This document shows, one piece after another, positions 5,258 to 59,772 of a stretch of 64,000 bases of DNA. A program made the translations under genes and the position numbers. The notes below the pieces were generated by a model. The model did no database searches. It was not told the origin of the DNA and saw nothing but the letters and a program-made list of their open reading frames with translations. This stretch comes from Octopus bimaculoides (Eukaryota), in NCBI RefSeq assembly GCF_001194135.2, contig NC_068990.1, positions 93,426,006-93,490,005 on the forward strand, given 5' to 3'. Numbering within the stretch: position 1 is the stretch's first letter; each line of letters starts with the position of its first letter.

Positions 5258-5600
5258 AGACTGACAGGTCTGGATAGACTTTCATATTAGACTAGACACA
5301 TCCAGTTAGACTGATTCTTCTGTAAATAGACTTCTATACAAGACTGACAGTTTTGCATAGTATTCCATATTAGACTGACAGTTCTGGACAGGCTTCCATA
5401 CAAGACTGACAGTTCTAATTGGACTACCATGTTAAACTGACAATTGTGAATAGACTTCCATGCTAGACTGCCAGTTTTGGATGGGTTTCCAAGACAGGCT
5501 GACCATTCAGTAATAGACTTCCACATAACACTGACAGTTCTAGATGGATTTCCATATAAGACTGACAATTCTAGATAGACCTCCATATAAGACTGTTAGC
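5258..5600. repeat. Degenerate 31-bp tandem repeat, about 11 units
   Basis: Unit approximately AGACTGACAGTTCTGGATAGACTTCCATATA, read directly. Confidence 0.9.
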
Positions 5601-11294: not shown

Positions 11295-11690
11295 CATCAT
11301 CATCACCATCATCGTTTAAGGTCCGCTTTCCATGCTGGCATGGGTTGGACGGTTTGATTGAAGACTGGCAAGCCAGGAGGCTGCACCAGGCTCCCATCTG
11401 ATCTGGCAATGTTTCTACGGCTGGATGCCCTTCCTAATGACAACCACTCCAAGTGTGTAGTGAGTGCTTTTTACATGCCACCAGTATGGGGCCAGTCAGG
11501 CAGCACTGGCATCGGCCATGCTCAAATGGTGCTTTTTACGTGCCACCAGCATGGGTGCCAGTCAGGTGGTACTGGCATTGGCCATGACTACAATTTCACT
11601 TGACTCAACAGGTCTTCTGAAGCACAGCATATTGCCTGACGATTGAAAGGTATCTTTAAACAGGCCAGTTATGCGACACTGGCATCGGCA
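11295..11690 (-). mobile_element. RTE-type 3' UTR fragment
   Basis: Reverse complement of about 28250-28625. Further shorter copies at about 7651-7810(-), 17958-18060(-), 24510-24693(+), 27120-27300(-), 30560-30900(-), 42809-42890(+), 46490-46550(-), 47435-47570(+), 51670-51840(+). Confidence 0.8.
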
Positions 11691-16169: not shown

Positions 16170-16341
16170 AGTTCTATATTTGAGAGATGAAGAATTATTT
16201 ACATCATTTACATTTGACAGATATTTGTCCTCATCTTGTTTGTTATTAACACAACATTTCGGCTGATATACCCTCCAGCCTTCATCAGGTGTCTTGGGGA
16301 AATTTCTAACCTGGGTTCTTATTCCTAAGGTACTTTTTCTA

Positions 16342-16382
<41 letters not shown>

Positions 16383-16453
16383 TCACTGCCTGCAATCGAA
16401 CTCAGAATATTGGGGTTAGTAGCCCGCGCTCTTAACCACTACGCCATATGCCC
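16170..16453 (-). mobile_element. tRNA-headed short element with (AAT)n and hammerhead-like tail, copy A
   Basis: Minus strand reads GGGCATA-TGGCGTAGTGG (A box)...GAGTTCGATTGC (B box), (AAT)n, then GACAC-CTGATGA-A-GGCTG..CAGCC-GAA-AT-GT-T-GTGTT. Homologous to copies at about 29.0 and 34.1 kb. Confidence 0.85.
16248..16293 (-). ncRNA. Minimal type I hammerhead ribozyme motif (predicted)
   Basis: Perfect helix II GGCUG/CAGCC and intact cores; helix III reads AU/GU (a CpG-type change relative to copy C). Confidence 0.55.
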
Positions 16454-17406
16454 ATGGGATATCAGCTTAACAGATATGGGGTTATCTGATTTAATATTTC
16501 AGAGCTCAATAAATTTTCTTTTGTCTTTAATTCTCTTCTCGTTAAAATCACTTCAGCGAGAGGGAAAGAGTAAAACTCTAAATCGTTTGAAGTAATATTA
16601 AGTAATATAACTTTATCGCTCCTACCTGAAACTAAGATGGTACTTTTGCTTCCTGCTTGAGTAAGAATTTGTTAGGAGAGCGTAGAAGAATAAATGTGAT
16701 CATCAACTTCATCTCTCTCTCACTTTCTTAAGACAACCCCGCCACACACAGACACACATATGGGTCAGCTATTGGAATTTTGTTTACAACAAAAAACAGA
16801 ATTACTATTATTTTATACCTTCAGAATGTTTTGCAAAGCTATATTTAATGGTTGTGGCCCAATAAAAGTGAAGTGAATTGATAAAGGGATGCAGTAAGAA
16901 CTACGTAGAAATCTCATCAATAGGAGACGCAGAGATGTGGCAGGAGAGCTTTACACATCAGAAAGCAATTAGGTCATAGGAATGGAAAAGAAGATATTTC
17001 TTAAGCTAATAAAATGGAGTTAGAAAAAACATATTCTAAAGGATGTAAATACTACAAGAATTATAAAAATAATTCTCTGCATGATATGAATTCAAATATT
17101 GATTTAGCAATTAAGCTAAAATTATGATGGAATTTGATGCCAGTGGTGGGGAAGTTTTCTTTAAAATAAGTTTAGCTGCTTATTCAATGCACTTTTAAGG
17201 AAGAATGAAAACAGAACACTTAAAAATAAATATATGTGAATTTGCAAAGTGAACAATGGTAATGTTTAATGATTCAATTGAATCAGATAAAAAATATGCA
17301 TGACACCTTCTGTTTCAATCATCTTGGAATGACCAAAGCCTTGTGAGTAGATTTGGTAGATAGAAACTGAAAGAAGCCCATCATGTATGTGTGTGTGTGT
17401 GCGTGT

Positions 17407-19074: not shown

Positions 19075-19620
19075 TGAGGGTGGGTCAAAAAATAATGCCA
19101 TTTTGTTTAGGACAGGTATAATTACCAACACAGGAACATGTAACATACATCAAAAGGAAGCTGGTCCTCTGTGGATCACATCCCTACTTCTCAACATAGT
19201 CACCATTTCTCTCAATAGCAATGTTCCACCTTCGAATAAGAGCATGTATCCCTGCCCCGTAAAATTCTGTTGACTGTTCTTTGAGCCACTTCTTCACTAC
19301 AGTTTTCACTTCTTCGTCACTGGAATAATGTTTGCCTCTCAAACCCTCTTTCATGGGGCCGAAGAGATGATAGTCTGATGAGGAAGTGAAAACTGTAATG
19401 AAGAAGTGGCTCAAAGAACAGTCAACAGAATTTTATGGGGCAGGGATACATGCTCTCATTCGAAGGTGAAACATTGCTATTGAGAGAAACGGTGACTCTG
19501 TTGAGAAGTAGGGATGTGATTCACAGAGGACCAGCTTCATTTTGATGTATGATACATGTTCCTGTGTTGGTAATTATACCTGTCCTAAACAAAATGGCAT
19601 TACTTTCTGACTCACTCTCA
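19075..19620. mobile_element. Palindromic mariner/Tc1-derived non-autonomous element
   Basis: TA|TGAGGG...CTCA|TA ends; about 245-bp inverted arms, each containing the mariner transposase C-terminus (SDYHLFGPMKEGLRGKHYSSDEEVK...RRWNIAIERNGDYVEK on minus). Confidence 0.92.
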
Positions 19621-28805: not shown

Positions 28806-28963
28806 CTGTAATGAGAAGGTCAATCATCAGTAATGATATTGGGGTCTAAATTAATAAGGAACAAAATATAGGGAGACATTTAGCAATAGTTTGTCTAAAA
28901 AACAACAACAATGTTACTGTTTCAATGTCGTACCAGATGGACAAAAATTAACATAAATTCTAC

Positions 28964-29241
28964 ACATTATTTGCATTTGACGGATATTTGTCGTCATCTT
29001 GTTTGTTGTTAACATGTTTCGGCTGATATACCCTCCAGCCTTCATCAGGTGTCTTGGGGAAATTTCGAACCTGGGTTCTCAATTCCTAAGGTATTTTTCG
29101 ATATTATTATTATTATTCAGGTCACTGCCTGGAATCGAACTCGGAATCTTGGGGTTAGTAGCCAGTGCTCTTAACCACTATACCATATGCCCATCAAATG
29201 TAAATAATGTACATAATTCCTCATCTCTTAAATATAGAACT
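28964..29241 (-). mobile_element. Same element, copy B, with inverted tail segment at its 5' end
   Basis: Head ends at 29192; 29194-29241 is tail sequence in the opposite orientation (44/48 identical to the copy A tail). Confidence 0.85.
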
Positions 29242-30886
29242 ATAAATTCTACAGTCTTCGTTATGGGAATACTGTAATAAGTTTGAACCTTGAAGCATGA
29301 AGTAAAATCTACTAGAATTATCAAAACATTTGAGCCACTTTTCCCTGTTCCAACAGGTCGAATGGAATTTCTTGAAACAGATTTTTTGTGGCTGGATTGT
29401 CCTTCCCGTCATTAACCTCCACCTGTTCCCAAGTAAGATATGTTTTACACAAAAGACTGGAGACAAAGGACACCACTGATTGATGGTAATACTTGTTTAC
29501 AACAATCACATGATGTCAAAGCAAGAAGACAGTAACACACACACACACACACANNNNNNNNNNCACACACACACACACACACGACTGGCTTCTTTCAGTT
29601 TCTACTACCAAATTCACTTGCAAAGCTTTATTTGGCCCAGGACTATAATAGAAGAAAATAGCCCAAGGTGCCACACAGTGGGACTGAACCTACCACACTG
29701 CACATGACTACAATATTCATAACATCTAATTATAATATTCCCCATGCTACACTTAACTACAATAATCACCACACTACATCTAAGTACACCATTTGCAAGC
29801 CATCATGACTCAACAGTTTATTTATATCTCTTATGATATAAAACTAATTAGTAAGTTACTGAACTTGATATCCTAGATTCAGCAGCTTTGTGCAGACATC
29901 GTTGACTCAGTTTTACTATGAAACAACTACCTCTCACATTATGATGGAGTCCACCATTAGATGAGCATCCATCAGTAAAACATAATCCTAACAGAAACAG
30001 TGATAGAGTGAGGCGAAGCAGTTGGTGCAGTCGCCATTGAAGAAATGATCATTGTTGTGAATTATAGGAAACAGTGATTTCCAGTGCGGGGACAATGCTG
30101 GAGGTTTTAGGGGTAGGAGAGTTGATTAAATCTACCCTGGTAGGGAGCAAAAAGATGTTAATGAGGACAGGAGTGTGTAATTAAATACTGTCCCTCATTA
30201 TCATCATCATCATTGTCGTTTAACGTCTGCTTTCTAATCGACAGGCCCCCTCCCCCAAAGTTTCAAGCCTTGTGCCTAGAGTAAAAAAGATTATATCAAC
30301 ATTGGTGAAATGGAGAAAATTGTTTATTATGAATTCCAGAGACACAGTTTTCTTACACAGATGTTAATATCCAGGGACAGAGTTTTGTGTTATATTGATG
30401 TTGAATCAAAAAGCAACTGTCGTGTTAGATTTTCTAATAGGGGTGTCGAGGATTTCTGAAACGCTTGGCAAGGGTGCCTCGAGGCAGAAACGGTTGGGAT
30501 ACTGTGCTCTAACGACTGCAAAAAGAATAAAAGAATCTACCAAAGCACCATCTTGCTTTCATGTCTGCTGTCCATTGCAGACGTGCGTTGGATGGTTTGA
30601 CAGGATTTGATGATATGGAGGAGGGCCTCGTAAACCAATGTCTGCTTCAGCAGGATTTCTACAGATGGATGCCCTTCCTAACACCAACCACTTCACTGAG
30701 AGTATTGGGGGCATCTTCCATATCATCATCATCATAATCATTTAGAGTCCACTCTCCATGCTGGCATGGGTTAGACAGTTTGATGAGGCAGAGCTGCACT
30801 AGGTTGAAGGCACGGTTTGGCATGGTTTCTATAGCTGGATGCCCTTCTTAATGCCACCCCCTCCAGGAGCATAATGGGTGCTTTTC

Positions 30887-33914: not shown

Positions 33915-34086
33915 TTATTATTATTAAAGCTGCAAAAACATCACACTAAACTGCTACTCAGAGTTTCACGTTCCCCTTCATTGGACAGTTTTCAATCTAA
34001 ACTGTCTGATGAACGGGAATGTGAAACTCTGAGTAGCAGTTTTTTGTGATATTTTTGAGATGTTTTTGAAGCTTTGATAATAATAA
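33915..34086. repeat. Inverted repeat, 44-bp inner arms (33948-33991 / 33999-34042) extendable to about 75 bp
   Basis: AAACTGCTACTCAGAGTTTCAC...GACAGTTT-tcaatct-AAACTGTC...GTGAAACTCTGAGTAGCAGTTT. Confidence 0.9.
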
Positions 34087-34121: not shown

Positions 34122-34190
34122 GCATATGGCATAGTGGTTAAGAGCACAGGCTACTAACCCCAAAATTCCGAGTTCCATTCCAGGCAGAGA

Positions 34191-34243
<53 letters not shown>

Positions 34244-34378
34244 TCGAAAAATACCCAAGGAATGAGAACCCAGGTTCAAATTTCCCCAAGACACCTGATG
34301 AAGGCCGGAGGGTGTATCAGCTGAAACGTTGTGTTAACAACAAACAAGATGAGGACAAATATCAGTAAAATGTAAATA
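34122..34378 (+). mobile_element. Same element, copy C
   Basis: GCATATGGCATAGTGG A box, GAGTTCCATTCC B box, long (AAT)n, GACAC-CTGATGA-A-GGCCG..CAGCT-GAA-AC-GT-T-GTGTT at 34290-34335. Confidence 0.85.
34290..34335 (+). ncRNA. Minimal type I hammerhead ribozyme motif (predicted)
   Basis: CUGAUGA and GAA cores, helix I GACAC/GUGUU, helix II GGCCG/CAGCU (one mismatch, one wobble), palindromic helix III AC/GU, GUU triplet. Structure inferred by eye; activity unknown. Confidence 0.6.
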
Positions 34379-43179: not shown

Positions 43180-46100
43180 TCTACTCAAAGTTCTAGAGCA
43201 ATGGAAGAAGAATGGCAATGTGTGCATACTTAACCAGTCGATTAGGTCTGTAACAGGACTGAACAGTCATCTGAGAGGTCATGAATGGAGAGTCAGAAAT
43301 GCCAATGTCAATGAGGAAGCACAAAATGACAGCAATCATCTGTGAAGGTGAAGTAATCATTGTGTGTGCTTGTGCATGCGTGTGTGTGTGTGAGACCATG
43401 CACATGTGTGCATGTGTGTGTGTGAGACCATGCACATGTGTGCATGTGTGTGTGTGCATGACCTTGTCTTGACATTGTGTGATAGTTGTAAACGAGTGTC
43501 ACTCTCATACAAGCAGTGTCGTTCATTTCCTTCTGTGGAAACCTGTCCAGTCATGGGGAAATAGAACATTACTTGGAAACAAGTGAGAGTTAGCGACAGG
43601 AAGGACATCCAGACATTGAAAATCTGCCTCTGTGAATTCAATCTGACCCATGCAAATATGGAAAAGTGAACATTAACACATTAATGATGATGATGATGAC
43701 GATGACGACAATGACGATGTAACATATGGAAATTCTGAGACTGAATCAATGACAATATGCCATTGGTCCAGCATTGCTGATATGGATTTGTTGCTGTGGT
43801 CCAGATGTTTTATCAAGTTCGTTAGCAATTAATCAACATGGTGCATATGACTTGTCTATGACATCTCTACATCAAACCAATTGTCGTATCTAGGACTGAT
43901 TTGTTTCATTCAGGCCATGGCTCTTACAAATTTCATTTTGTTGAGTAAGACTTTTTATTTTGTAATATTTTTAGAATTAATTACTCTATAAAAATCGGAC
44001 TCCAAAACTAATAAACTCCCAGGATAATTAATTGCATCACTTTTTATCCCGCATTTTCGGAGATGTTTGTCTTCCCTATTTAGGTTTCCTGGCCAACCAT
44101 TAACGATGTTAAATGACGATGATGATGATGATGGTAATGATGACAATTTCAGGACTGATTCCATTTCTTTGGCAGTGACTGACATTTCCATTCATAACTT
44201 CCATGTCGTTCAAATCCGGATGCAAAATGAATTCCATGACTTACATTAAAATCAGCCGAGTGTGTGATTAAGCTCAGTCCTGCAGCACGGCACCTCAGGC
44301 AAATGTCTGCAACTATAGCTCTAGGTGAACCAATGTCTTGTGAGTAAATTTGGTAGATGGAAACTGTGTGGAAGCCTGTCAAGTGTATGGGTGTGTGTAT
44401 GTTTTTGTGTTTGTCCTCCCACAGCTTGACAACTGGTGTTGGTTTGTTTACATCTCTGTAACATAGTGGTTCGGTTAAAGAAGCTGACAAAGTAAGTACC
44501 AAACTTAAAATAAGTACTGGGGTCCATTTGTTCGACTAACCCCACAAGATAGTGCTCCAGCATGGCTGCAGTCCAATGACTTGCAAAAGTAAAAGAGGTT
44601 GAATTGGCAGTCTTCATAATCCATTAGCAATTCCTTGTTTCACCATACTAAATATATTTGTATGACACCAATAACATTGCCCAACCATGCAGCGGCTGAG
44701 ATGTATATACTGGTATATACTGAGATGTAAACACTGGTATATACTGAGATGTATATACTGGTATATACTGAGATGTATACACTGGTATATACTGAGATGT
44801 ATATATACTGGTATATACATCTCTGATGAGAGAAATATGTGTGTATTATTATTAGCAGCATGTGATCAGTGATTAATTCAAAATGTTACCCATATATGAA
44901 TCCATTAAATTGGTGAAGGTCAGATATAATTGGTAATTATCTATTTGCAACCATCAATGTTGATACGCATTCAATATTTTACACAAATGAACCAATCAAT
45001 GCTCAACTCCGCTTTGATGTTGTCACAGAAGTGCAACCGTGATGCATCTGCTGCCAAAACGACTGGCAAATTTCTGTAGTAATGCGAGACTTGTGTCTTC
45101 AATTAATCACTTGACCGTTCAACTCATCAAAACTTCAGCAACAATCCTTACTTTAAATAGTACCTTTTTTGTTTGTTTGTTTGTTTGTTAAATTGACATT
45201 TCAAGTCATGACTATTTAACTGATAAAATATTATTTTTAAATTATTCAAATATTCTTCATCTGTTGCCATGGTAACAATGGTATCATCCACATACAGAGC
45301 ACAATGCTCTAATACTGATAACATTTCATTAACTGGAAAATTTTAAATGACATTCATTTGTACTTGTAAAGAGCAAAAGGTATATTTATCAGGAATAAAT
45401 TTTGTGAGTCTTCTATTAACTCAAACTGTTAAATAATCATTTTTTAAACTGATATGCCCAAGTTTTACCCACCCTCCAGTTTATAGAATAATTCATTGTA
45501 TCTTGGCACTGAATTTACGAGCTTTTGAATTCCTGTCGTTCTCTCAATCCCATTAGAAATAAGAGAGATTTTGATGAAATGCTGTGAGACCAGTATAAAA
45601 GTCATTAAAACATAATCAGTGCATGAATTTGGATAAAACTGGCTGATATGATGTGATACTCACTGTTGATGTACATAATTGAGAATGTGGTTGTTACCTG
45701 TTGTCATGTCACTTTTACTTGCCGAAGTAGGTTGAATACAAGTAAGTTGATTATACGGAAGTATAGTCACACATATTTGCAATATGTTGATCTGTTTTGC
45801 AGTTAGCCTCTGTAACTTGGTTAGTTGCACAACTATTATCAGAAAAAAGCATTCTGAAGTGTCCCTTCATCTCCTCTACTGATGTAATGCCATGTTCACA
45901 GGCAAACCTCATGGATTATCTGGACAAAAATTTCATTAGGAAAATGTTGAAGAAAATACTCAATGGACTTTGCTTATAAAAGGTTTGTGGGACTCTCACT
46001 AACGAAAGCATTGATGTAATGATCAAATATACAACCAGTCTACACCTGCTCAGAATCAATAAATCTTAATACCAAATACATCACTGGTGTCTACAAATAA
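43180..46100 (-). mobile_element. Decayed Ty3/Gypsy pol remnant (RT, RNase H, integrase), interrupted by SINEs
   Basis: Hand translation of minus strand with stops/frameshifts: SVPRYNELFYKLEGG (~45500), ALYVDDTIV..EEYLNNLKIIF (~45300-45230), NLPVVLAADAS (~45070-45040), VTAKE..IVNGWP and MKQISPRYDNW (~44190-43870), in gypsy domain order. Confidence 0.8.
44696..44826. repeat. 24-bp tandem repeat (CTGAGATGTATATACTGGTATATA) x5
   Basis: Read directly; ends in an inverted partial unit TATATACATCTC. Confidence 0.9.
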
Positions 46101-46560
46101 CACTGTTATTTCTCTCTGATTATTTTCTCCAAGTTAAAGCTCTCTTTCTCTAACTAAATCATTTATATATATAATTATGAATGAATAACATCACTAAATC
46201 CTAACTCACAGCCAGAGGTATACCTGTCATAATGCTGGAAAGTTCTTTCTAAAGTGAGGTTAAATTTTGTTTCTCACATGGAAGATATTTCTCCCAAACA
46301 ACAACAACAACACTGCCAAACCCTTTGTCATTTAAACCAGCCATATCTGATCTAATTATTCTACCTGTTTTATGTTCAAACTCACCAGATCTGACCTCTC
46401 ACACCTCCCCTACAATGTCATTCTCAAAATAAAGAGTCACATCATCAAAATCTCAACGGTATGATGCATGATTAAGTCAAAACAATCATCATCATCATCA
46501 TCGTCGTTTAACGTCCTCTTTCCATGCTGGCATGGGTTGGACAGTTTGACTGTAGAAAGG

Positions 46561-46601
<41 letters not shown>

Positions 46602-48317
46602 TTTCATTTGATGTCACATATACATTTATAAAAAGATTTATTTTTCTACATGAATAACATTTTTTCCCCCTTATGTGAACAATATTTTTCTGAGTTTCTC
46701 TGTGGTTGATTTGACACTTTACACAAACTTTCTTTTATTTTATATTTATCTGAAATTTGTCACAAATAGCTTTGAATTTGATATTTTTAATATAATTCAA
46801 TCATCATCATCATCAATAATAGTGTAAAAAAATATTCCTATTGGCCTAGTAAACCCATTCTGTCAAAAATGACAGCATTTTAAAATAAATAAGCTCAAAT
46901 TAAAATGAAATAAACACACACACACCCTACCACTGATATAGATACATACTTGACTTAGTGAGGATAATAGGTTTTTTTTATGAAAATTCTTTCAAGAATT
47001 GAATTCAAAGAGTTTGAAAATTTTCATCCCTAAAAGGAGTTTAACAGTGAACTTCATGATAAAAAATTTATGTAAACAATAGATATAATAAATGCCTAAT
47101 TTAGCAGAAAAGAAATATATATTACATGTGTGTGAGTATAATTGTCTCTCACAGGTGTCTATGTATGATGTGTTTGTGTACTTGGAAGAGGTTGTTTTTT
47201 TTTACTTTTGTTGTTCCGATTAACTTTTGCAGCTTGAATTTTGAAGAGCAGAACTAAAGATGGAAAATATTTCAAAGTCTATGAATGAGTCTTAATCACC
47301 TACAATGCCAGTTTATCTTCCTTTCTTCTGTTTCCCTTCCACTACCAGAACACTTTAGTGGGACAGCGAAAAAAAAAAAAAAAATAGATATACTTACATA
47401 TAAATACACAATCAAGTTTATTATAACAGACTACACTCTCAGAGTGGTTGGCGTTAGGAAGGGCATCCAGCTGTAGAAAGTTTGCCAGATCAGAATGAGT
47501 GTTGTGCAGCCTTCTGGCTCACCAGTGCTCAGTCAAATCGTCCAACCCATGCCAGCATGGAAAGTGGACAGCTTTAACAAGAACAGATTTTGCAACAAAT
47601 TTTGTGTTCCAACTCAAATACATTTGGATTAGGTTGTAGGTTAATAATGGTTTCTTGGTACATAGAAAATATGTTTCTCAATTTGTCATGATTTTGTTTT
47701 GTTCCTGCATTTAGTGGAGAATGAATATTATTTGTGCATCTGATTCCATTTCAGAAAATTTCAACCAAGTGGGCTACTTTTCTTTCAGTAGTCTACAAAG
47801 TAGATTTCTTTTTAGCCTAGATTTGTGAAATATTGTGAAGAGAAATACTTGACAAAATTATATGACAAACGGGGAAAATCTACTGGAATTATTTGATGGA
47901 AAAACAATCTGTCAGAAATAAAATAATGTTGACAAGTTGAACTATTATTAATAATAATAATAATTGACTGCAAGAATTCATTGCGGGGGTTCTTGAAGCA
48001 GGACCAGTAAACAAGTGTCACCCTAGTCCGCTGGCTGTGGACAGCTGACACATTCTATCACACCCAGCAAAATAAGCTGTGAGTTTTCATATGATGATGA
48101 TGATAATAATAAAAATGATTTCAAATTTTGGTACAAGGCCAGCAATTTGAGGGGAGAGGGTTAAGTTGATTAGATCGACCCCAGTATGCAACTGGTACTT
48201 ATTTTACCGACTCTGAAAGGATGAAAGGCAAAGCTGACCTGGGCGGAATTTGAATTCAGAATGTAGTTATGGCCGAAATACCACTAAGCATTTCATTGAT
48301 TCTGCCAGCTCCCTGCT

Positions 48318-48353
<36 letters not shown>

Positions 48354-55120: not shown

Positions 55121-57018
55121 TTTGTTAACTTTTAGGTTCCAAAATGCATATTGAGAAAAATGAAGCAGAAAGAAATGCGAGACTTGTAATGTCCTATTAG
55201 TATTGTGTATCTAATTAAGATTCAGTTGAATTAGGTACTTAAATTGAGGCACCTTGCCAGTTCGGTATAGTCCGCACAGCTCCAAGTTAGGTGAACAGAA
55301 TGTAAATTAGTAACAAGGAGGTATCCTTGTTACTTATTTATGTGGGTGTGTGTATTAATATTTAGCAGAAGTAACAGAGTGGCTCAAGGTCCGAGATTTT
55401 CGTGTGTTGGCATGAATATATATATATATAAACACACACATACGTGTGAGTGTTAGTTCACACTACGAAATAAATAAAATTTATCTAACACTATACTCAT
55501 GTTGTATCGATGTAATATGAAAGTAAACTTGGCTTGAAACAATTCCAGCGAAGTAAAGGCTGTGGTAAGAAGCTTGCTTCCCAACCACATTGTTCCTCAG
55601 TTCAGTCTTATAGCGTGGCACACTTGTCTTCTTGGGCTGATCCAAAAGTGTGTGTGTTTGTATCTGTGTATATTCAGTTTTATTTCGAAATTTCTTGCCA
55701 TTGAGTTCTTGTAGTAGCCAGCTCTTTGACAGAAAGAGGAAAAAATGGAGAGCGAATATATAGGGAGAGAGAGAGAGAGTACCAGTTGAACACTGGGTTG
55801 ATGTAATCAACGCATCACCATCTCCCCCAAGCTGCCCTTGTGACAAAATTTGAATTCATTATTATTATCATAGGACATGCTCAACTGGTTAAGGTCAAAC
55901 AAGTGACAAGCAAATCTGTGGTATTGAGCAGAATATTTGCTGTAGCCCATCTTTTATACCAAGACCAAGCAATGTACATGATAACACTTCCAGTCAGTTA
56001 AGATCAGGAACCATGAGAGCCATTGCCGGGTACTTTATCATCATCATCATCATCATCGTTGTTGTTGTTAAGGTTGCAAGCTGCAAGAACCATTAACATA
56101 CCAAACTAAAAACACAGTGGCATTTCCTGTGGCTCTTGATGTTCTGAGTTCAAATGCTGTTGAGGTCATCTATGTTTTCGTTGTTTTGGGGGTCAATAAA
56201 ATTAAGTCTCAGTCAAGCACTGGGTAAGTGGAGGACGAGGGGTCAATGTAATCGACTACCCCCCCCCCCATCCTTATGCCAATGACAGAAAGCATTGTCA
56301 TTAGGAAGCAGAGTTGTCACTGCATCAGACAAAATTGCTCAGCAGCATTTCATCCGAAGTTTTGTGTTCTGAATTCAAAACTTATCTAAGGCTGATTTTG
56401 TTTTTCAGCTTTTGGGTAAGATGTTGACAGAATAAGTACCAGATATGTTCTGGGGTTGATGTAAATGACTTATGACTTGTCCCCCTCCCCCAAATTTTAG
56501 GTCTTGTAGAAGGGGTATTATTTATGCCTTTATTGGCCACAAGAGGCAAAACATAGAGGGGACAACCAAGGACAGACAAAGGGATTAAGTCAATTACATC
56601 GACTCCAGTGCATAACTGGTACTTATTTTATCGACCCCGAAAAGATGAAAGGCAAAGTCGACCTCGGCAGAATTTGAACTCAGAACGTAAAGACAGACGA
56701 AATACCGCTAAGCATTTCACCCGGCATCCTAACGACTCTGTCAACTCGTTGCCCTTAAGCAAGGGTTATTATTAATGACACTGAACTGGCAGCATCCTTT
56801 GCACTCAAGACAAACAAACCCAACAGTATTTCGTCTGTCTTTATGTTCTGAGTTCAAATTCTGCTGAGGTCGACTTTGCCTTTCATCCTTTCGGGGTCAA
56901 TTAAATAAATACCCAATTGAACACTGAGGTTGATGTAATCAACTAGCCTCCTCCCCTTCAGGTTTGTACTTATTGTAGAAAGTGTTATTATCATCATCAT
57001 CATCATCATCATTATTAC

Positions 57019-57052
<34 letters not shown>

Positions 57053-57054
<2 letters not shown>

Positions 57055-57269
57055 GGTGGTGAGCTGGCAAAATTGTTAGCATGCTGGGCAAAATGCATAA
57101 CAGCGTTTTGTCCATCCTTTCATTCCGAGTTCAAATTCTGTCAAATTCAACTTTACCTTTCATCCTTTTGGGGTCAATGAAATAAGAACCAGTTATGCAC
57201 TGGGGTTGATGTAATCGACTGTCCCCCTCTGCCCCAAATTTCAGGCCTTTGCCTATAGTAGAAAGGATT
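57053..57269 (+). mobile_element. tRNA-derived SINE with a Deu/Nin-like central domain
   Basis: AAGGTGGTGAGCTGGCAAAA head, GAGTTCAAATTC B box, CTTTACCTTTCATCCTTTTGGGGTCAATGAAATAAGAACC segment resembling the recalled Deu/Nin domain. Copies at about 10005-10210(-), 24108-24310(-), 48112-48330(-), 48591-48800(-), 49017-49233(-), 56570-56760(-), 56830-56985(+), 59128-59312(+). Confidence 0.8.
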
Positions 57270-57280
57270 ATTATTATTAC

Positions 57281-57346
<66 letters not shown>

Positions 57347-59772
57347 TATTATTACAACAGTCTGGAAATAATTTTCTCTGTAAATCATTCTATGAAGAAC
57401 GCTCCTCTCCAACCCTTATAACTCTCTTCTGCTTACTGCATATTATCCACGTTTTACTTTCTATTGAAATCGTTTCTGTTAACTGACCCCAATTCTGCCT
57501 TCCTTGAATGTCACTGTTTGCGTTTCATATGGAAAACAACAAATTATTGAATATTTTAACACTCTATTCTTTTCCCTGTTTACCGAAACGATTATGCAGT
57601 GATTTCTCCAACACATGAATGAGATTGTATAACAACTGTGCGACAAGGAAATGTATTCATTAAAATAAATGTTGTTACTGTGTTATTAACGATGATGGTA
57701 TTTAGAGCAGAGGGTGTGTGCAAACAACATTTAACACAAACTACAGAACTACACAATCGGTTTTTTATTGGTCAAACAACAACAATATCTTCAGGGCTTG
57801 TGTAAAATGTAAAAGGCAAATGTGATTAATTAAGAATGTGAGTAATTAAGACATTTCAGCGGATTTTTTTTGGAAAGTTTTCTTGTATTATGTCTGCTTA
57901 TCAAACAGCCATTCCTGCCCCGTGGGTTATCTTCTAGGACAGCTACAGAGGCTTAAATCTGTAAATATAATAAATTCTCTAAATATAGTAAATTAGAACT
58001 AAAGGAATTAAAGAAGGTTATAAAGATTTTAATCTTTGCTGAATCCTTGACAGGGTTTCAATTTCTGGTTGAAGCTATTTCAATTCATTTATGTAAGAAA
58101 TGTCTTTTGAAAGGATATTTACATCACAGCTTCCTATTTCTAGTAAAATGAAAATAAAAATCTCACTATTTGAGCTTAGAAAAAATGAAACTTATTGTTG
58201 AAATCAGAAATTACTATTGAACTGTCTGGATCTGAAATATGCTGGACTAAATGTGTTAGTTTATTTGATATGCTACCCCCTTATTCTAAGTTCAAATCCA
58301 TTTAAGATCATCTTTACTTTTTTTTTCCGTTTAAATGATAAGTAATTGGTATTTAATTGACATGTGGGTCTTTTTAAAGCATTATACTCCTTCCCTTTGT
58401 CTGTAATTTCTTCAAAAGATATTCAGTAGTCAAAATGCATGAATATCAAAAGTTTTTAGCCAAATAGCGTTATCTACCAAATAAGAATTATCTTCCTTAG
58501 CTCATAGTAAATGCTTGAATTCTCTCCCTTACATCGAGGAATGGAAGAAATAATGGTTCAGTGTTGCTGTGTTGGAACGTTAAGCAGTAAAATCTCAACG
58601 AGAATAGAAAGTAGATTATTGGTTACAAGAGAGTCGTGATTCAGTGTTTTGTCAGAATCGTCGGTTGTATATTTTAGAGTGAAGTCAGGACAGCTACCCT
58701 GTCTTACATTACTTAGTTTCTTGGTTTTAAAATAATATCCGGATATTTATGTCAAAATGACAGAAGTTATCAAAAACTGGACAGAACTTGAAATTGTGAT
58801 CTATTGACAATCGATTCGATATTAAATGCCGCTAAGCATTTTTTACCCTGGCGCCCTGACAATTCTGTTGGCTCACCATTTTAGCATGCCTAGACATTAA
58901 TAGCACTTAGTTATGGCTTTCAGCCACAGACTGGTGAAGTTGGTTCTGTTAAGAACTAATTGATCTGTAATAAATATAAGCACTCTTGTTTATCTTAAAA
59001 GAAAGCAAAAGATACTTTTGAATTTTCAGGAAAATAGCACAACACTAACCACTGATTCACATTTTTAGTTAAAAACCTGAAATGTGATAATCTTCATATA
59101 TATAGCTTTGTTATTTTAAAATACACAAAGGTGGGTGAGGTAGCAGAATTTTTAGCAAGCTGGGAAAAATGCTTAGCGCCATTTTACCACTTTTATGTGC
59201 TGAGTTCAAACTCTGCCAAGGTCAACTTTGCCTTTCATCCTTTTGGGGTCAGTGTAATTGACTGGCCCCTTCCTGCAAAGTTTCAGACCTTTATGCCTGT
59301 TAGAGAAAGGATTTTAAAATACACAGAGGGCAACAGTCTTGTTGTTGTCTCTAGTTTTTTGCCTTACACATAGAAACACAAACACACAAGTCAATGTAAT
59401 ACGTGAGTGTGTCTGCGTCAGTGTCTGATGTGTGTGAGTGTGTGCATCATCATCATCACCATCATCGTCATCATTGTCATCATTCAAAGTCTGTTTTTCC
59501 AGGTTGGTAGAGGTGTGTGTGTCTGTGTGTCTGTGTGTATAATTTCTCACTCTCTCTCTCTCTCTCTCTTTCTCCTCCTCCTCCTCATCTCTGATTCGAA
59601 ACAAAATTACTTCCGTAATTCTTGAAGAGAATAAAAAAACTCCCTCTCCGCATTCTCCCTGTTTAGTCCTTTGATGTAAGATTTATCTGCATAAGCCTCT
59701 GATTAGCATCATAAACGTTTTGTGTGTGTGTGTGTAAATGTGCAAATGTGTGTGTATGTGTTTGTGTGTGTG

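What the first reader, a model, noticed from the sequence alone, without database searches (positions are those of the whole stretch)
34122..34378. tRNA-headed SINE-like element whose tail is a minimal Penelope-type hammerhead ribozyme (three copies)
Seen: three homologous copies (16170-16453 minus, 28964-29192 minus, 34122-34378 plus). Each has a tRNA-like head with A box TGGCGTAGTGG and B box GAGTTCGATTCC, then (AAT)n, then GACAC-CUGAUGA-A-GGCUG-loop-CAGCC-GAA-AC-GU-U-GUGUU. This gives helix I (5 bp, one G-U), helix II (5 bp), a 2-bp self-complementary helix III and a GUU triplet. Established: minimal type I hammerheads with a palindromic helix III occur in Penelope-like element termini and are thought to act as dimers. 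An extra nucleotide after A9 is known in a viroid hammerhead, and the schistosome Sm-alpha repeat is a precedent for a tRNA-related repeat with a hammerhead. Inference: this is a Pol III-driven non-autonomous retroelement mobilised by a Penelope RT rather than a LINE, possibly with self-cleaved or circular RNA intermediates. Most known SINEs borrow LINE tails. I do not know whether this family is already described as ribozyme-bearing.
Basis: partly seen in the sequence, partly recalled or inferred. Interest (0 to 1): 0.85.

Follow-up and report, generated by a model that had tools for sequence, protein, structure and literature searches.

The report
Octopus SINE with Penelope-type hammerhead tail
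This is a short mobile element of octopus genomes that joins a tRNA-style promoter head to a minimal hammerhead ribozyme tail. The way its copies are inserted suggests that Penelope-like retrotransposons copied it, not the LINEs that normally move such elements.

Summary
The three copies are real (16170-16453 minus, 28965-29192 minus, 34122-34378 plus). The window is Octopus bimaculoides, in introns or upstream sequence of a USP46-like gene.

It is the family consensus. Ten sequences from six independent copies in three Octopus species each carry at least one lesion, mostly decay of the two CpGs inside the core. The consensus meets the published non-descriptor hallmarks of Penelope-type minimal hammerheads.

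The new evidence is the insertion architecture:
- Three of four insertion events carry a second, inverted copy (47 nt to nearly full length) abutting the head.
- Two events are bracketed by one 12-13 bp target duplication.
- A conserved 32-33 nt terminal extension sits in full on only one arm per event.

These are published Penelope-like element (PLE) signatures, and LINE-mobilised SINEs are not expected to show them.

No autonomous PLE sharing the tail could be looked for, so the partnership is inferred. Circular or self-cleaved intermediates are not supported: there are no tandems, the termini are fixed, and every copy is contiguous across the cleavage site. I found no prior description, but Repbase and Dfam could not be searched.

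The parts
16170..16453 (-). Copy c16: full SINE including the terminal extension. It lies in an intron of the USP46-like gene, in the sense orientation.
   Evidence: Orthologous copies are present in O. sinensis (L005 72240-72530) and O. vulgaris.
16379..16453 (-). c16 tRNA-like head. A box TGGCGTAGTGG sits at element positions 8-18 and B box AGTTCGATTGC at 52-62.
   Evidence: It is not recognised as a tRNA by ARAGORN or Rfam.
16344..16378 (-). c16 internal (AAT)n microsatellite, 11.7 units.
16248..16293 (-). c16 hammerhead block GACAC-CUGAUGA-A-GGCUGG..UCAGCC-GAA-AUGU-U-GUGUU. It has one lesion, C15.2 to U, which is a CpG decay.
   Evidence: It passes the descriptor only if G-U is allowed in helix III.
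16202..16247 (-). c16 46-nt tail downstream of the hammerhead.
16170..16201 (-). c16 terminal extension (TAAATAATTCTTCATCTCTCAAATATAGAACT). It is absent from the 3' ends of the c29 and c34 main copies.
   Evidence: (30/33 identical to the c29 inverted fragment; 0 of 500 shuffles reach that score).
28953..28964 (+). Left target-site duplication ATAAATTCTACA of the c29 insertion.
   Evidence: 12/12 direct repeat. It is conserved in O. sinensis.
28965..29192 (-). Copy c29: main arm, without the extension. It lies about 150 nt upstream of USP46-like exon 2, in the sense orientation.
29011..29053 (-). c29 hammerhead block with a 3-nt deletion in the GUUGUGUU run that holds the cleavage site, and a G-to-A change beside the gap.
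29194..29241 (+). Inverted, 5'-truncated second arm of the c29 insertion: the last ~15 nt of the tail plus the full 33-nt extension, abutting the head of c29.
   Evidence: It is also present in O. sinensis and O. vulgaris.
29242..29253 (+). Right target-site duplication ATAAATTCTACA of the c29 insertion.
34122..34378 (+). Copy c34, the finding's own coordinates. It has no extension and its 5' end lacks the first 2-3 nt. Its orthologue in O. sinensis and O. vulgaris is the minus arm of a head-to-head pair.
34290..34335 (+). c34 hammerhead block. The core and ACGU are intact, but helix II is damaged (GGCCG/CAGCU).

Best explanation
This is a family of roughly 230-290 nt non-autonomous retroelements of Octopus.

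**Structure.** A degenerate tRNA-derived head supplies an internal RNA polymerase III promoter (A and B boxes). After it come an unstable (AAT)n linker and a 3' module. That module holds a Penelope-type minimal hammerhead, a 46-nt tail and a 32-33 nt terminal extension. I infer that the 3' module was copied from the 3' end of a Penelope-like element.

**Proposed mechanism.**
1. Pol III transcribes from the head through the whole element into a flanking T-run. This step is inferred.
2. The reverse transcriptase and GIY-YIG nuclease of a Penelope-like element recognise the 3' module in trans and copy it at a staggered break. This step is inferred.
3. Often both DNA ends prime on a SINE RNA. This gives two arms joined head to head inside a single 12-13 bp target duplication, with the extension kept in full on only one arm. 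The architecture is shown; the priming model is inferred.

**State of the hammerhead.** It is intact in the family consensus. After insertion it decays neutrally, fastest at the two CpGs in its core (C11.1-G12 and C15.2-G16.2). The RNAs that were actually copied were uncleaved. The ribozyme is therefore more likely an inherited recognition or processing module of the Penelope 3' end than the generator of the SINE's ends.
For: Family and head:
- Six independent copies in three species share one 5' end. A and B boxes sit at tRNA positions 8-18 and 52-62.

Hammerhead:
- The consensus passes a strict minimal-hammerhead descriptor, with 0 hits in 300 shuffles of the window.
[quoted passage not shown] Its helix I of 5 bp also fits their 4-5 bp.
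- All helix III variants (AUGU, ACAU) are single CpG-decay steps from ACGU.
- The helix I plus helix II fold lies within 0.6 kcal/mol of the minimum free energy.

Insertion architecture:
- c29 has a 12-bp target duplication around the main copy plus an inverted 47-nt 3' fragment, conserved in O. sinensis.
- O. sinensis and O. vulgaris have two head-to-head pairs with the identical junction CCATATGCC-TGT-GGG. One pair is bracketed by the 13-bp duplication ATGATCTTGTAAA.
- The full extension is on only one arm in all four events.
- Craig et al. 2021 describe exactly these features for PLEs: an inverted 5'-truncated copy at the 5' end, and a 30-40 bp tail often at only one end.

Context:
- There is no poly(A) or microsatellite 3' tail. 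Another SINE family in the same window ends in (ATT)n.
- Thirty Penelope families are reported as recently active in O. vulgaris.
Against: - No autonomous Penelope-like element sharing the tail was found. The reachable loci (window, L005, L006, L007, L008) contain no PLE reverse transcriptase or GIY-YIG motif, only LINE-type and LTR-type RT fragments.
- No partial tandem (pseudo-LTR) arrangement, the commonest PLE signature, was seen.
- The head is not detectable as a tRNA.
- No Rfam hammerhead model matches.
- Helix II is 5-6 bp, against the 7-8 bp reported for schistosome PLE hammerheads.
- No target duplication could be found for c16 or for the c34/39k event.
- The sample is only four insertion events in one gene.
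- Ribozyme activity is untested, and published minimal PLE hammerheads cleave poorly in vitro.
Confidence: 0.68

Rival explanations
1. It is an ordinary tRNA-derived SINE mobilised by a LINE. The hammerhead-like block is an incidental or captured sequence with no link to Penelope-like elements.
For: - No PLE partner was found.
- LINE reverse transcriptase fragments are present in the same loci.
- Other SINEs are abundant in the window.
- No Rfam hammerhead hit.
- Every genomic copy has a damaged motif.
Against: - There is no A-rich or microsatellite 3' tail.
- Both arms of the double insertions carry their own 3' ends. That is not what L1-type twin priming produces (twin priming as I know it from Ostertag and Kazazian 2001, recalled from memory).
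- The full extension sits on one arm only in all four events.
- The consensus motif has four PLE-specific features beyond the core boxes and 0 chance hits in shuffles.
Confidence: 0.12
2. The units are not SINEs but short non-autonomous or truncated Penelope pseudo-LTR derivatives. The 'tRNA head' is a chance resemblance, and transcription comes from a Pol II promoter of the pLTR kind.
For: - The head fails ARAGORN even at relaxed thresholds and fails Rfam tRNA.
- Short non-autonomous Penelope elements are known in Heliconius butterflies and in Chlamydomonas.
- The insertion architecture is PLE-like.
Against: - Six independent copies share the same 5' end, rather than the variable 5' truncation typical of PLEs.
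- The A box matches TRGCNNAGTGG exactly in the CpG-restored consensus. The B box matches 10/11. Both sit at exact tRNA positions 8-18 and 52-62.
- There is no TTTT run inside the consensus.
Confidence: 0.1
3. It is a metazoan non-LTR retrozyme. Tandem copies would be transcribed, self-cleaved at the hammerhead, circularised by a tRNA ligase, and the circles reverse-transcribed.
For: - It has a hammerhead in a non-coding retroelement of about 250 nt with a likely PLE connection.
- Solo retrozyme monomers are known.
Against: - No tandem array of the unit occurs in the window or the loci.
- All copies have the same 5' and 3' termini and are contiguous across the cleavage site.
- The ribozyme is the minimal PLE type, without helix III loop or loop-loop contacts, not the canonical type I of retrozymes.
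Confidence: 0.06

Closest known systems
Minimal type I hammerheads of Penelope-like elements (Cervera and de la Pena 2014, PMC4209133; Lunse et al. 2017 as cited there)
   Same: - CUGAUGA and GAAA boxes.
- An unpaired nucleotide between A9 and G10.1.
- The G10.1-C11.1 pair.
- No helix III loop, with palindromic A-C-G-U that can only pair between two copies.
- A short 5-bp helix I.
- Dispersed, mostly single motifs in a metazoan genome.
   Different: - It sits inside a roughly 260-nt unit with a tRNA-type Pol III head, not in the pseudo-LTR of an RT-encoding element.
- Helix II is 5-6 bp, against the 7-8 bp reported in schistosomes.
- No PLE open reading frame is nearby.
Sm-alpha / Sj-alpha SINE-like hammerhead elements of Schistosoma (Ferbeyre et al. 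1998; Laha et al. 2000; summarised in PMC6765202)
   Same: A short non-coding retroposon that combines a Pol III promoter with a hammerhead ribozyme.
   Different: - The schistosome ribozyme is a canonical type I hammerhead that is active on its own, and the elements are often tandem.
- Here the motif is the minimal dimer-requiring type, the copies are dispersed or inverted but never tandem, and the Rfam Hammerhead_1 model does not match.
- Sequence homology to Sm-alpha was not tested.
Metazoan non-LTR retrozymes (Cervera and de la Pena 2020, PMC7229834; Li et al. 2026 preprint 10.64898/2026.07.22.740005)
   Same: A non-autonomous, hammerhead-bearing element of 170-400 nt, proposed to depend on Penelope-like elements.
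   Different: - Retrozymes are defined by tandem organisation and circular RNA, and no Pol III head has been reported for them.
- This family has a fixed linear unit, a tRNA-type head and no tandems.
Non-autonomous Penelope-like derivatives (MRC1 and others in Chlamydomonas, Craig et al. 2021 PMC8557442; short non-autonomous Penelope in Heliconius, PMC6685494)
   Same: Non-coding elements that share PLE insertion peculiarities and presumably the 3' end of an autonomous PLE.
   Different: - Those are internally deleted PLEs that form pseudo-LTRs.
- This one has a foreign tRNA-like head, which is the SINE design, and no pseudo-LTR.
Classical tRNA-derived SINEs with LINE partners, including the octopus OK/OR1/OR2 SINEs (Ohshima and Okada 1994, seen only as a citation)
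   Same: - A tRNA-type A and B box head.
- A composite build: head, body and a borrowed 3' module.
- Target duplications and high copy number in octopus.
   Different: - The 3' module carries a hammerhead, and the 3' end has no simple-repeat or poly(A) tail.
- The insertions are two-armed and inverted.
- I could not compare sequences with OK/OR1/OR2 because that paper is not held.

Membership tests
tRNA-derived SINE (SINE2) | Internal Pol III promoter: A box (TRGCNNAGTGG) and B box (GGTTCGANNCC) at tRNA spacing | tested here: met
   The CpG-restored consensus has TGGCGTAGTGG at positions 8-18 and AGTTCGATTCC at 52-62. Individual copies carry 0-2 changes.
tRNA-derived SINE (SINE2) | Recognisable tRNA homology or cloverleaf in the head | tested here: not met
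   - ARAGORN finds nothing in the window, the three heads or the consensus, even at relaxed thresholds.
- No Rfam tRNA match at E up to 10.
tRNA-derived SINE (SINE2) | Short, non-coding, dispersed copies with a constant 5' end and target-site duplications | tested here: met
   - Six independent copies of 230-290 nt share the same 5' end.
- 12-bp and 13-bp duplications flank two events.
- No duplication was found for the other two events.
tRNA-derived SINE (SINE2) | 3' module shared with an autonomous partner in the same genome | not testable with these tools
   No tool searches octopus genomes by DNA. The reachable loci hold no partner.
Penelope-type minimal hammerhead ribozyme | Conserved core CUGANGA ... 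GAAA with helices I and II | tested here: met
   - The consensus passes the strict descriptor, with 0 hits in 300 shuffles.
- Every genomic copy has at least one lesion.
Penelope-type minimal hammerhead ribozyme | Nucleotide between 9 and 10.1, G10.1-C11.1 pair, palindromic 15.2-16.2 without loop 3, helix I of 4-5 bp | tested here: met
   The consensus reads CUGAUGA-A-G..C-GAA-ACGU-U, with a 5-bp helix I.
Penelope-type minimal hammerhead ribozyme | Enlarged helix II (6-8 bp) | tested here: inconclusive
   There are 5 Watson-Crick pairs plus one G-U, giving 6 bp. That equals the D. virilis value and is below the schistosome 7-8 bp.
Penelope-type minimal hammerhead ribozyme | Self-cleavage, as a dimer | not testable with these tools
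   This needs in vitro transcription of monomer and dimer constructs.
Rfam hammerhead families (Hammerhead_1, _3, _II, HH9, HH10) | Covariance-model match | tested here: not met
   There is no match at the gathering threshold, or at E up to 10 on the two copies scanned, c16 and c34. These models include a helix III stem-loop that minimal PLE motifs lack; that last point is from my own knowledge.
Penelope-like element dependent (PLE-type insertion) | Inverted 5'-truncated copy immediately adjacent to the 5' end | tested here: met
   Present in three of four events: the c29 47-nt arm, and the 39k and 91k head-to-head pairs.
Penelope-like element dependent (PLE-type insertion) | 30-40 bp extension (tail), often present at only one end of the insertion | tested here: met
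   A conserved 32-33 nt extension is present in full on only one arm in all four events.
Penelope-like element dependent (PLE-type insertion) | Partial tandems forming pseudo-LTRs | tested here: not met
   No direct tandem of the unit occurs in the window or the loci.
Penelope-like element dependent (PLE-type insertion) | An autonomous RT plus GIY-YIG element with the same 3' end in the genome | not testable with these tools
   - No PLE RT or GIY-YIG motif occurs in the window, L005, L006, L007 or L008.
Metazoan non-LTR retrozyme | Tandem repeats, each with a canonical type I hammerhead, expressed as circular RNA | tested here: not met
   - There are no tandems.
- The motif is the minimal type.
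- Circular RNA cannot be tested here.

The most novel reading that the evidence does not exclude
This would be the first recognised tRNA-promoter SINE whose partner is a Penelope-like element and not a LINE. Its palindromic-helix-III hammerhead would do more than cleave. By pairing two SINE RNAs, it would deliver two templates to one staggered break. That would explain the head-to-head double insertions with an identical junction. It would also explain why thousands of 'orphan' minimal hammerheads are scattered through invertebrate genomes.
Probability: 0.2. Interest if true: 0.8.

Novelty: new variant of a known kind. Interest (0 to 1): 0.62.

Why it matters
- **A new kind of partner.** As far as I know, the SINEs whose partners have been identified depend on LINEs. 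A SINE that borrows the 3' end of a Penelope-like element would add a second class of autonomous partner.
- **A tractable reporter.** A small, abundant element of this kind could be used to study the poorly understood Penelope integration mechanism: two-ended priming, inverted arms and terminal extensions.
- **An explanation for orphan hammerheads.** It would give a concrete origin for at least some of the dispersed minimal hammerheads that earlier surveys attributed to truncated PLEs.
- **A use in annotation.** Octopus genomes are about 12% SINE, and in O. vulgaris most recently active SINE families are unclassified. The one-sided extension and inverted arm could help classify them.
- **A caution for ribozyme surveys.** Two CpGs inside the ribozyme core explain why almost every genomic copy is dead while the consensus is intact. 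Surveys that score individual loci would miss such a family.

Tried and rejected
1. Rfam at the gathering threshold on the window, and at E up to 10 on two copies, gave no hammerhead or tRNA.
2. ARAGORN on the window and, relaxed, on the heads and consensus found nothing.
3. I tried to harvest more copies by searching an antisense ORF that spans the SINE in the protein collection.
4. Exact-pattern scans of metagenome contigs (two) and viral contigs (one) with conserved 22-nt and 32-nt stretches gave 0 hits.
5. A single-exon USP query returned only short metagenome fragments of distant animals. The spliced 351-aa query did work, and it led to the Octopus loci.
6. I looked for an empty site for the 91k pair in O. 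bimaculoides. The region is rearranged and there is no clean empty site.
7. I looked for the partner arm of c34 in O. bimaculoides. Homology stops at the head, so loss versus gain cannot be decided.
8. I tested for a degenerate inverted arm or an upstream extension copy at c16. The result is marginal (p about 0.05-0.07 and 0.15) and is not claimed.
9. I searched for PLE RT or GIY-YIG motifs in all loci. Only LINE-type YADD fragments turned up.
10. A Pfam scan of all window ORFs was prepared but not run, because it would not have reached the decisive partner question.
11. Literature searches combined hammerhead, SINE, octopus, cephalopod, mollusc, Penelope and retrozyme, and also used literal sequence strings. 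No description of this family was found.
12. Covariation analysis was rejected as uninformative. The copies decay neutrally, and the HHR substitution rate (about 3%) equals that of the rest of the element.

Full report
**What is there**

The window holds three copies of one repeat: c16 at 16170-16453 (minus), c29 at 28965-29192 (minus) and c34 at 34122-34378 (plus). They differ pairwise by 7-11% in substitutions. A sensitive blastn found no further copy in the window, apart from a short inverted fragment next to c29. A 32-nt degenerate pattern over the ribozyme core hits exactly these three places, against 0 expected.

Each copy has these parts, in order:
- a 72-75 nt head;
- an (AAT)n run of 5 to 16 units;
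- a linker of about 50 nt;
- a 46-nt hammerhead-like block;
- a 43-46 nt tail.

There is no poly(A) or simple-repeat 3' end. Another SINE family in the same window ends in (ATT)n.

**Correction to the observation**

The three copies differ from it as follows:
- c34 has the intact core and ACGU, but helix II reads GGCCG/CAGCU.
- c16 has one change, ACGU to AUGU.
- c29 has lost 3 nt (GUU, or an equivalent triplet, from the run that holds the cleavage site), with a G-to-A change beside the gap.

A strict minimal-hammerhead descriptor therefore matches none of the three. It matches c16 if G-U is allowed in helix III, and c34 if one helix II mismatch is allowed. It matches the consensus outright. 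It gave no hit in 300 dinucleotide shuffles of the window on both strands.

No Rfam hammerhead or tRNA model matches, even at E up to 10. ARAGORN finds no tRNA in the heads or the consensus at relaxed thresholds. The head is thus 'tRNA-like' only in having A and B boxes at exact tRNA positions, 8-18 and 52-62.

**Where the window comes from, and more copies**

Exons of a USP12/46-type deubiquitinase lie on the minus strand. The spliced 351-aa product is 100% identical to USP46-like of Octopus vulgaris and O. sinensis. I fetched that gene from four genomes:
- O. sinensis (L005) and O. vulgaris (L006), both about 88-92% identical to the window.
- O. bimaculoides (L008), which is 100% identical to the window. 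The window is therefore O. bimaculoides chromosome CM046610.1.
- Argonauta hians (L007), which has no copy of the family in this locus.

In O. sinensis and O. vulgaris, c16 and c29 have orthologues, so both insertions predate the split of these species. c34 corresponds to the minus arm of a head-to-head pair (L005 38942-39157 and 39162-39403). A further head-to-head pair lies at L005 91391-91949. This gives six independent copies from four insertion events, sampled in ten lineage sequences.

**The hammerhead is ancestral and decays neutrally**

All ten sequences carry at least one lesion in the 46-nt block, but the consensus is intact. The helix III variants are AUGU (c16, 39m) and ACAU (c29, 91m). 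Both are single CpG-decay steps from ACGU, which survives in c34, 39p and V_91p. The C11.1-G12 step is a second CpG. It shows the matching C-to-T change (c34, S_91p) or G-to-A change (S_c29, S_39p, V_91p).

In the three window copies, substitutions in the block (about 3%) equal those in the rest of the element. There is thus no sign of constraint after insertion, as expected for dead SINE copies. A 3-nt deletion in the GUUGUGUU run at the cleavage site recurs in four lineages and differs even between orthologues. I leave this unexplained.

The consensus has the hallmarks that Cervera and de la Pena (2014) say emerged without being imposed by their search: a nucleotide between 9 and 10.1, G10.1-C11.1, and a palindromic 15.2-16.2 without loop 3. 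Its helix I of 5 bp also fits their 4-5 bp. Helix I plus helix II lies within 0.6 kcal/mol of the minimum free energy fold.

**The insertion architecture points to Penelope-like elements**

*c29.* On the plus strand this insertion reads:
- target duplication ATAAATTCTACA (28953-28964);
- the SINE in minus orientation (28965-29192);
- a plus-orientation copy of the last 47 nt of the element (29194-29241);
- ATAAATTCTACA again (29242-29253).

The same structure and duplication are present in O. sinensis.

*The extension.* The last 33 nt of that fragment are not found after the c29 main copy or after c34. They do follow c16 directly: 30 of 33 nt are identical, and 0 of 500 shuffles reach that score.

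*The two pairs.* In the O. sinensis and O. vulgaris pairs the heads face each other across an identical junction, CCATATGCC-TGT-GGG. The 91k pair is bracketed by one 13-bp duplication, ATGATCTTGTAAA.

*Across the four events.* The full extension is carried by only one arm in every event. The other arm ends at variable points within AAATGTAAATAATGTAAATAG.

Craig et al. (2021) list precisely these peculiarities for Penelope-like elements. [quoted passage not shown] They also describe a 30-40 bp extension that is often present at only one end.

Each arm has its own 3' end. The structure is therefore not the inversion-with-truncation made by L1 twin priming (from my own knowledge). It looks instead like priming on a SINE RNA from both ends of one staggered break. 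The other classic PLE feature, partial tandems, was not seen.

**What is shown and what is inferred**

Shown:
- the family and its constant 5' end;
- the A and B boxes;
- the intact ancestral minimal hammerhead of Penelope type;
- the CpG-driven decay;
- the two-armed, single-duplication insertions with a one-sided extension, conserved across species.

Inferred:
- Pol III transcription;
- derivation of the 3' module from a PLE;
- mobilisation by a PLE reverse transcriptase and GIY-YIG nuclease.

I could not test the decisive point, an autonomous PLE with the same 3' end. No tool searches octopus DNA, and the roughly 320 kb reached hold only LINE-type and LTR-type RT fragments. PLEs are reported as recently active in O. 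vulgaris, with 30 Penelope families, so a partner is plausible.

**The ribozyme's role**

Every copy is contiguous across the GUU/G site and extends 43-79 nt beyond it. The RNAs that were reverse-transcribed were therefore uncleaved. With no tandems and fixed termini, a retrozyme-like circular route is unlikely.

The most economical reading is that the hammerhead is part of the PLE 3' module that the SINE borrowed. Its function in PLEs themselves is still called unclear. A speculative extension is that the palindromic helix III pairs two SINE RNAs and so favours the double insertions. Nothing here tests that.

**Novelty**

The following are known:
- minimal hammerheads in PLEs, and many 'orphan' dispersed ones;
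- Sm-alpha, a Pol III SINE-like element with a canonical hammerhead;
- retrozymes as proposed PLE dependants;
- internally deleted non-autonomous PLEs.

Nine literature searches, including literal sequence strings, found no description of a tRNA-promoter SINE with a Penelope-type 3' module, nor of this octopus family. Repbase and Dfam could not be searched. I rate it a new variant of a known kind, with interest 0.62.

Noticed in passing
window 6216-28823, minus strand: Exons of a USP46-like deubiquitinase lie at about 28.7, 14.2, 12.4, 10.3, 9.0, 8.2, 7.4 and 6.3 kb. The spliced product is 100% identical to the Octopus USP46-like protein. The window equals O. bimaculoides CM046610.1. c16 lies in the 14-kb intron, and c29 lies about 150 nt upstream of exon 2. 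Both are in the sense orientation.
   Followed up: yes
window 29011-29053; L005 38985-39030, 91440-91480; L006 orthologues: A 3-nt deletion in the GUUGUGUU run at the hammerhead cleavage site recurs in four lineages (W_c29, 39m, 91m, V_91p) and differs between orthologous copies. It could be a slippage hotspot, gene conversion between arms, or selection against a cleavable site in a host intron.
   Followed up: partly
window 33915-34086: An almost perfect hairpin or palindromic element lies directly upstream of c34, with 59-nt arms 88% complementary plus outer 31-nt arms and TTATTATTA/TAATAATAA ends. It looks like a MITE. This sequence, and not the second SINE arm, is what abuts the head of c34 in O. 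bimaculoides.
   Followed up: partly
window 46520-46600, 48150-48353, 56800-57354: A different, abundant SINE family has a B box (GAGTTCAAATTC) and (ATT)n tails. It includes two units in tandem at 56.8-57.35 kb. It shows that LINE-style simple-repeat tails are the norm for other SINEs here.
   Followed up: partly
L005 39157-39162 and 91626-91630 (and the L006 orthologues): Two independent head-to-head pairs share the identical junction CCATATGCC-TGT-GGG. This suggests a reproducible joining step at the RNA 5' end and not random ligation. The 5' end contains the palindrome CATATG.
   Followed up: partly
window 16456-16500: Just upstream of the c16 head are 11-mers resembling the tail (ATATCTGTTAA) and the reverse complement of helix II and its loop (GCTGATATCCC). 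They may be a degenerate inverted arm, but alignment to the consensus is only marginal (p about 0.05-0.07).
   Followed up: partly
window 19187-19432 (minus) and 45151-45342 (minus): A mariner-type transposase C-terminal remnant (DYHLF...GDYVEK) and an LTR-retrotransposon-type RT fragment (YVDD). Neither is Penelope-like. These are identified by eye, not by Pfam.
   Followed up: no
window 5325-5595, 44696-44818, 11464-11586: Tandem repeats with periods of 31/62, 24 and 66 nt, of unknown nature.
   Followed up: no
L007 (Argonauta hians USP46 locus, 47 kb): The gene spans 27 kb here, against 48 kb in O. bimaculoides and 83 kb in O. sinensis and O. vulgaris. It contains no copy of this SINE family.
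   Followed up: partly
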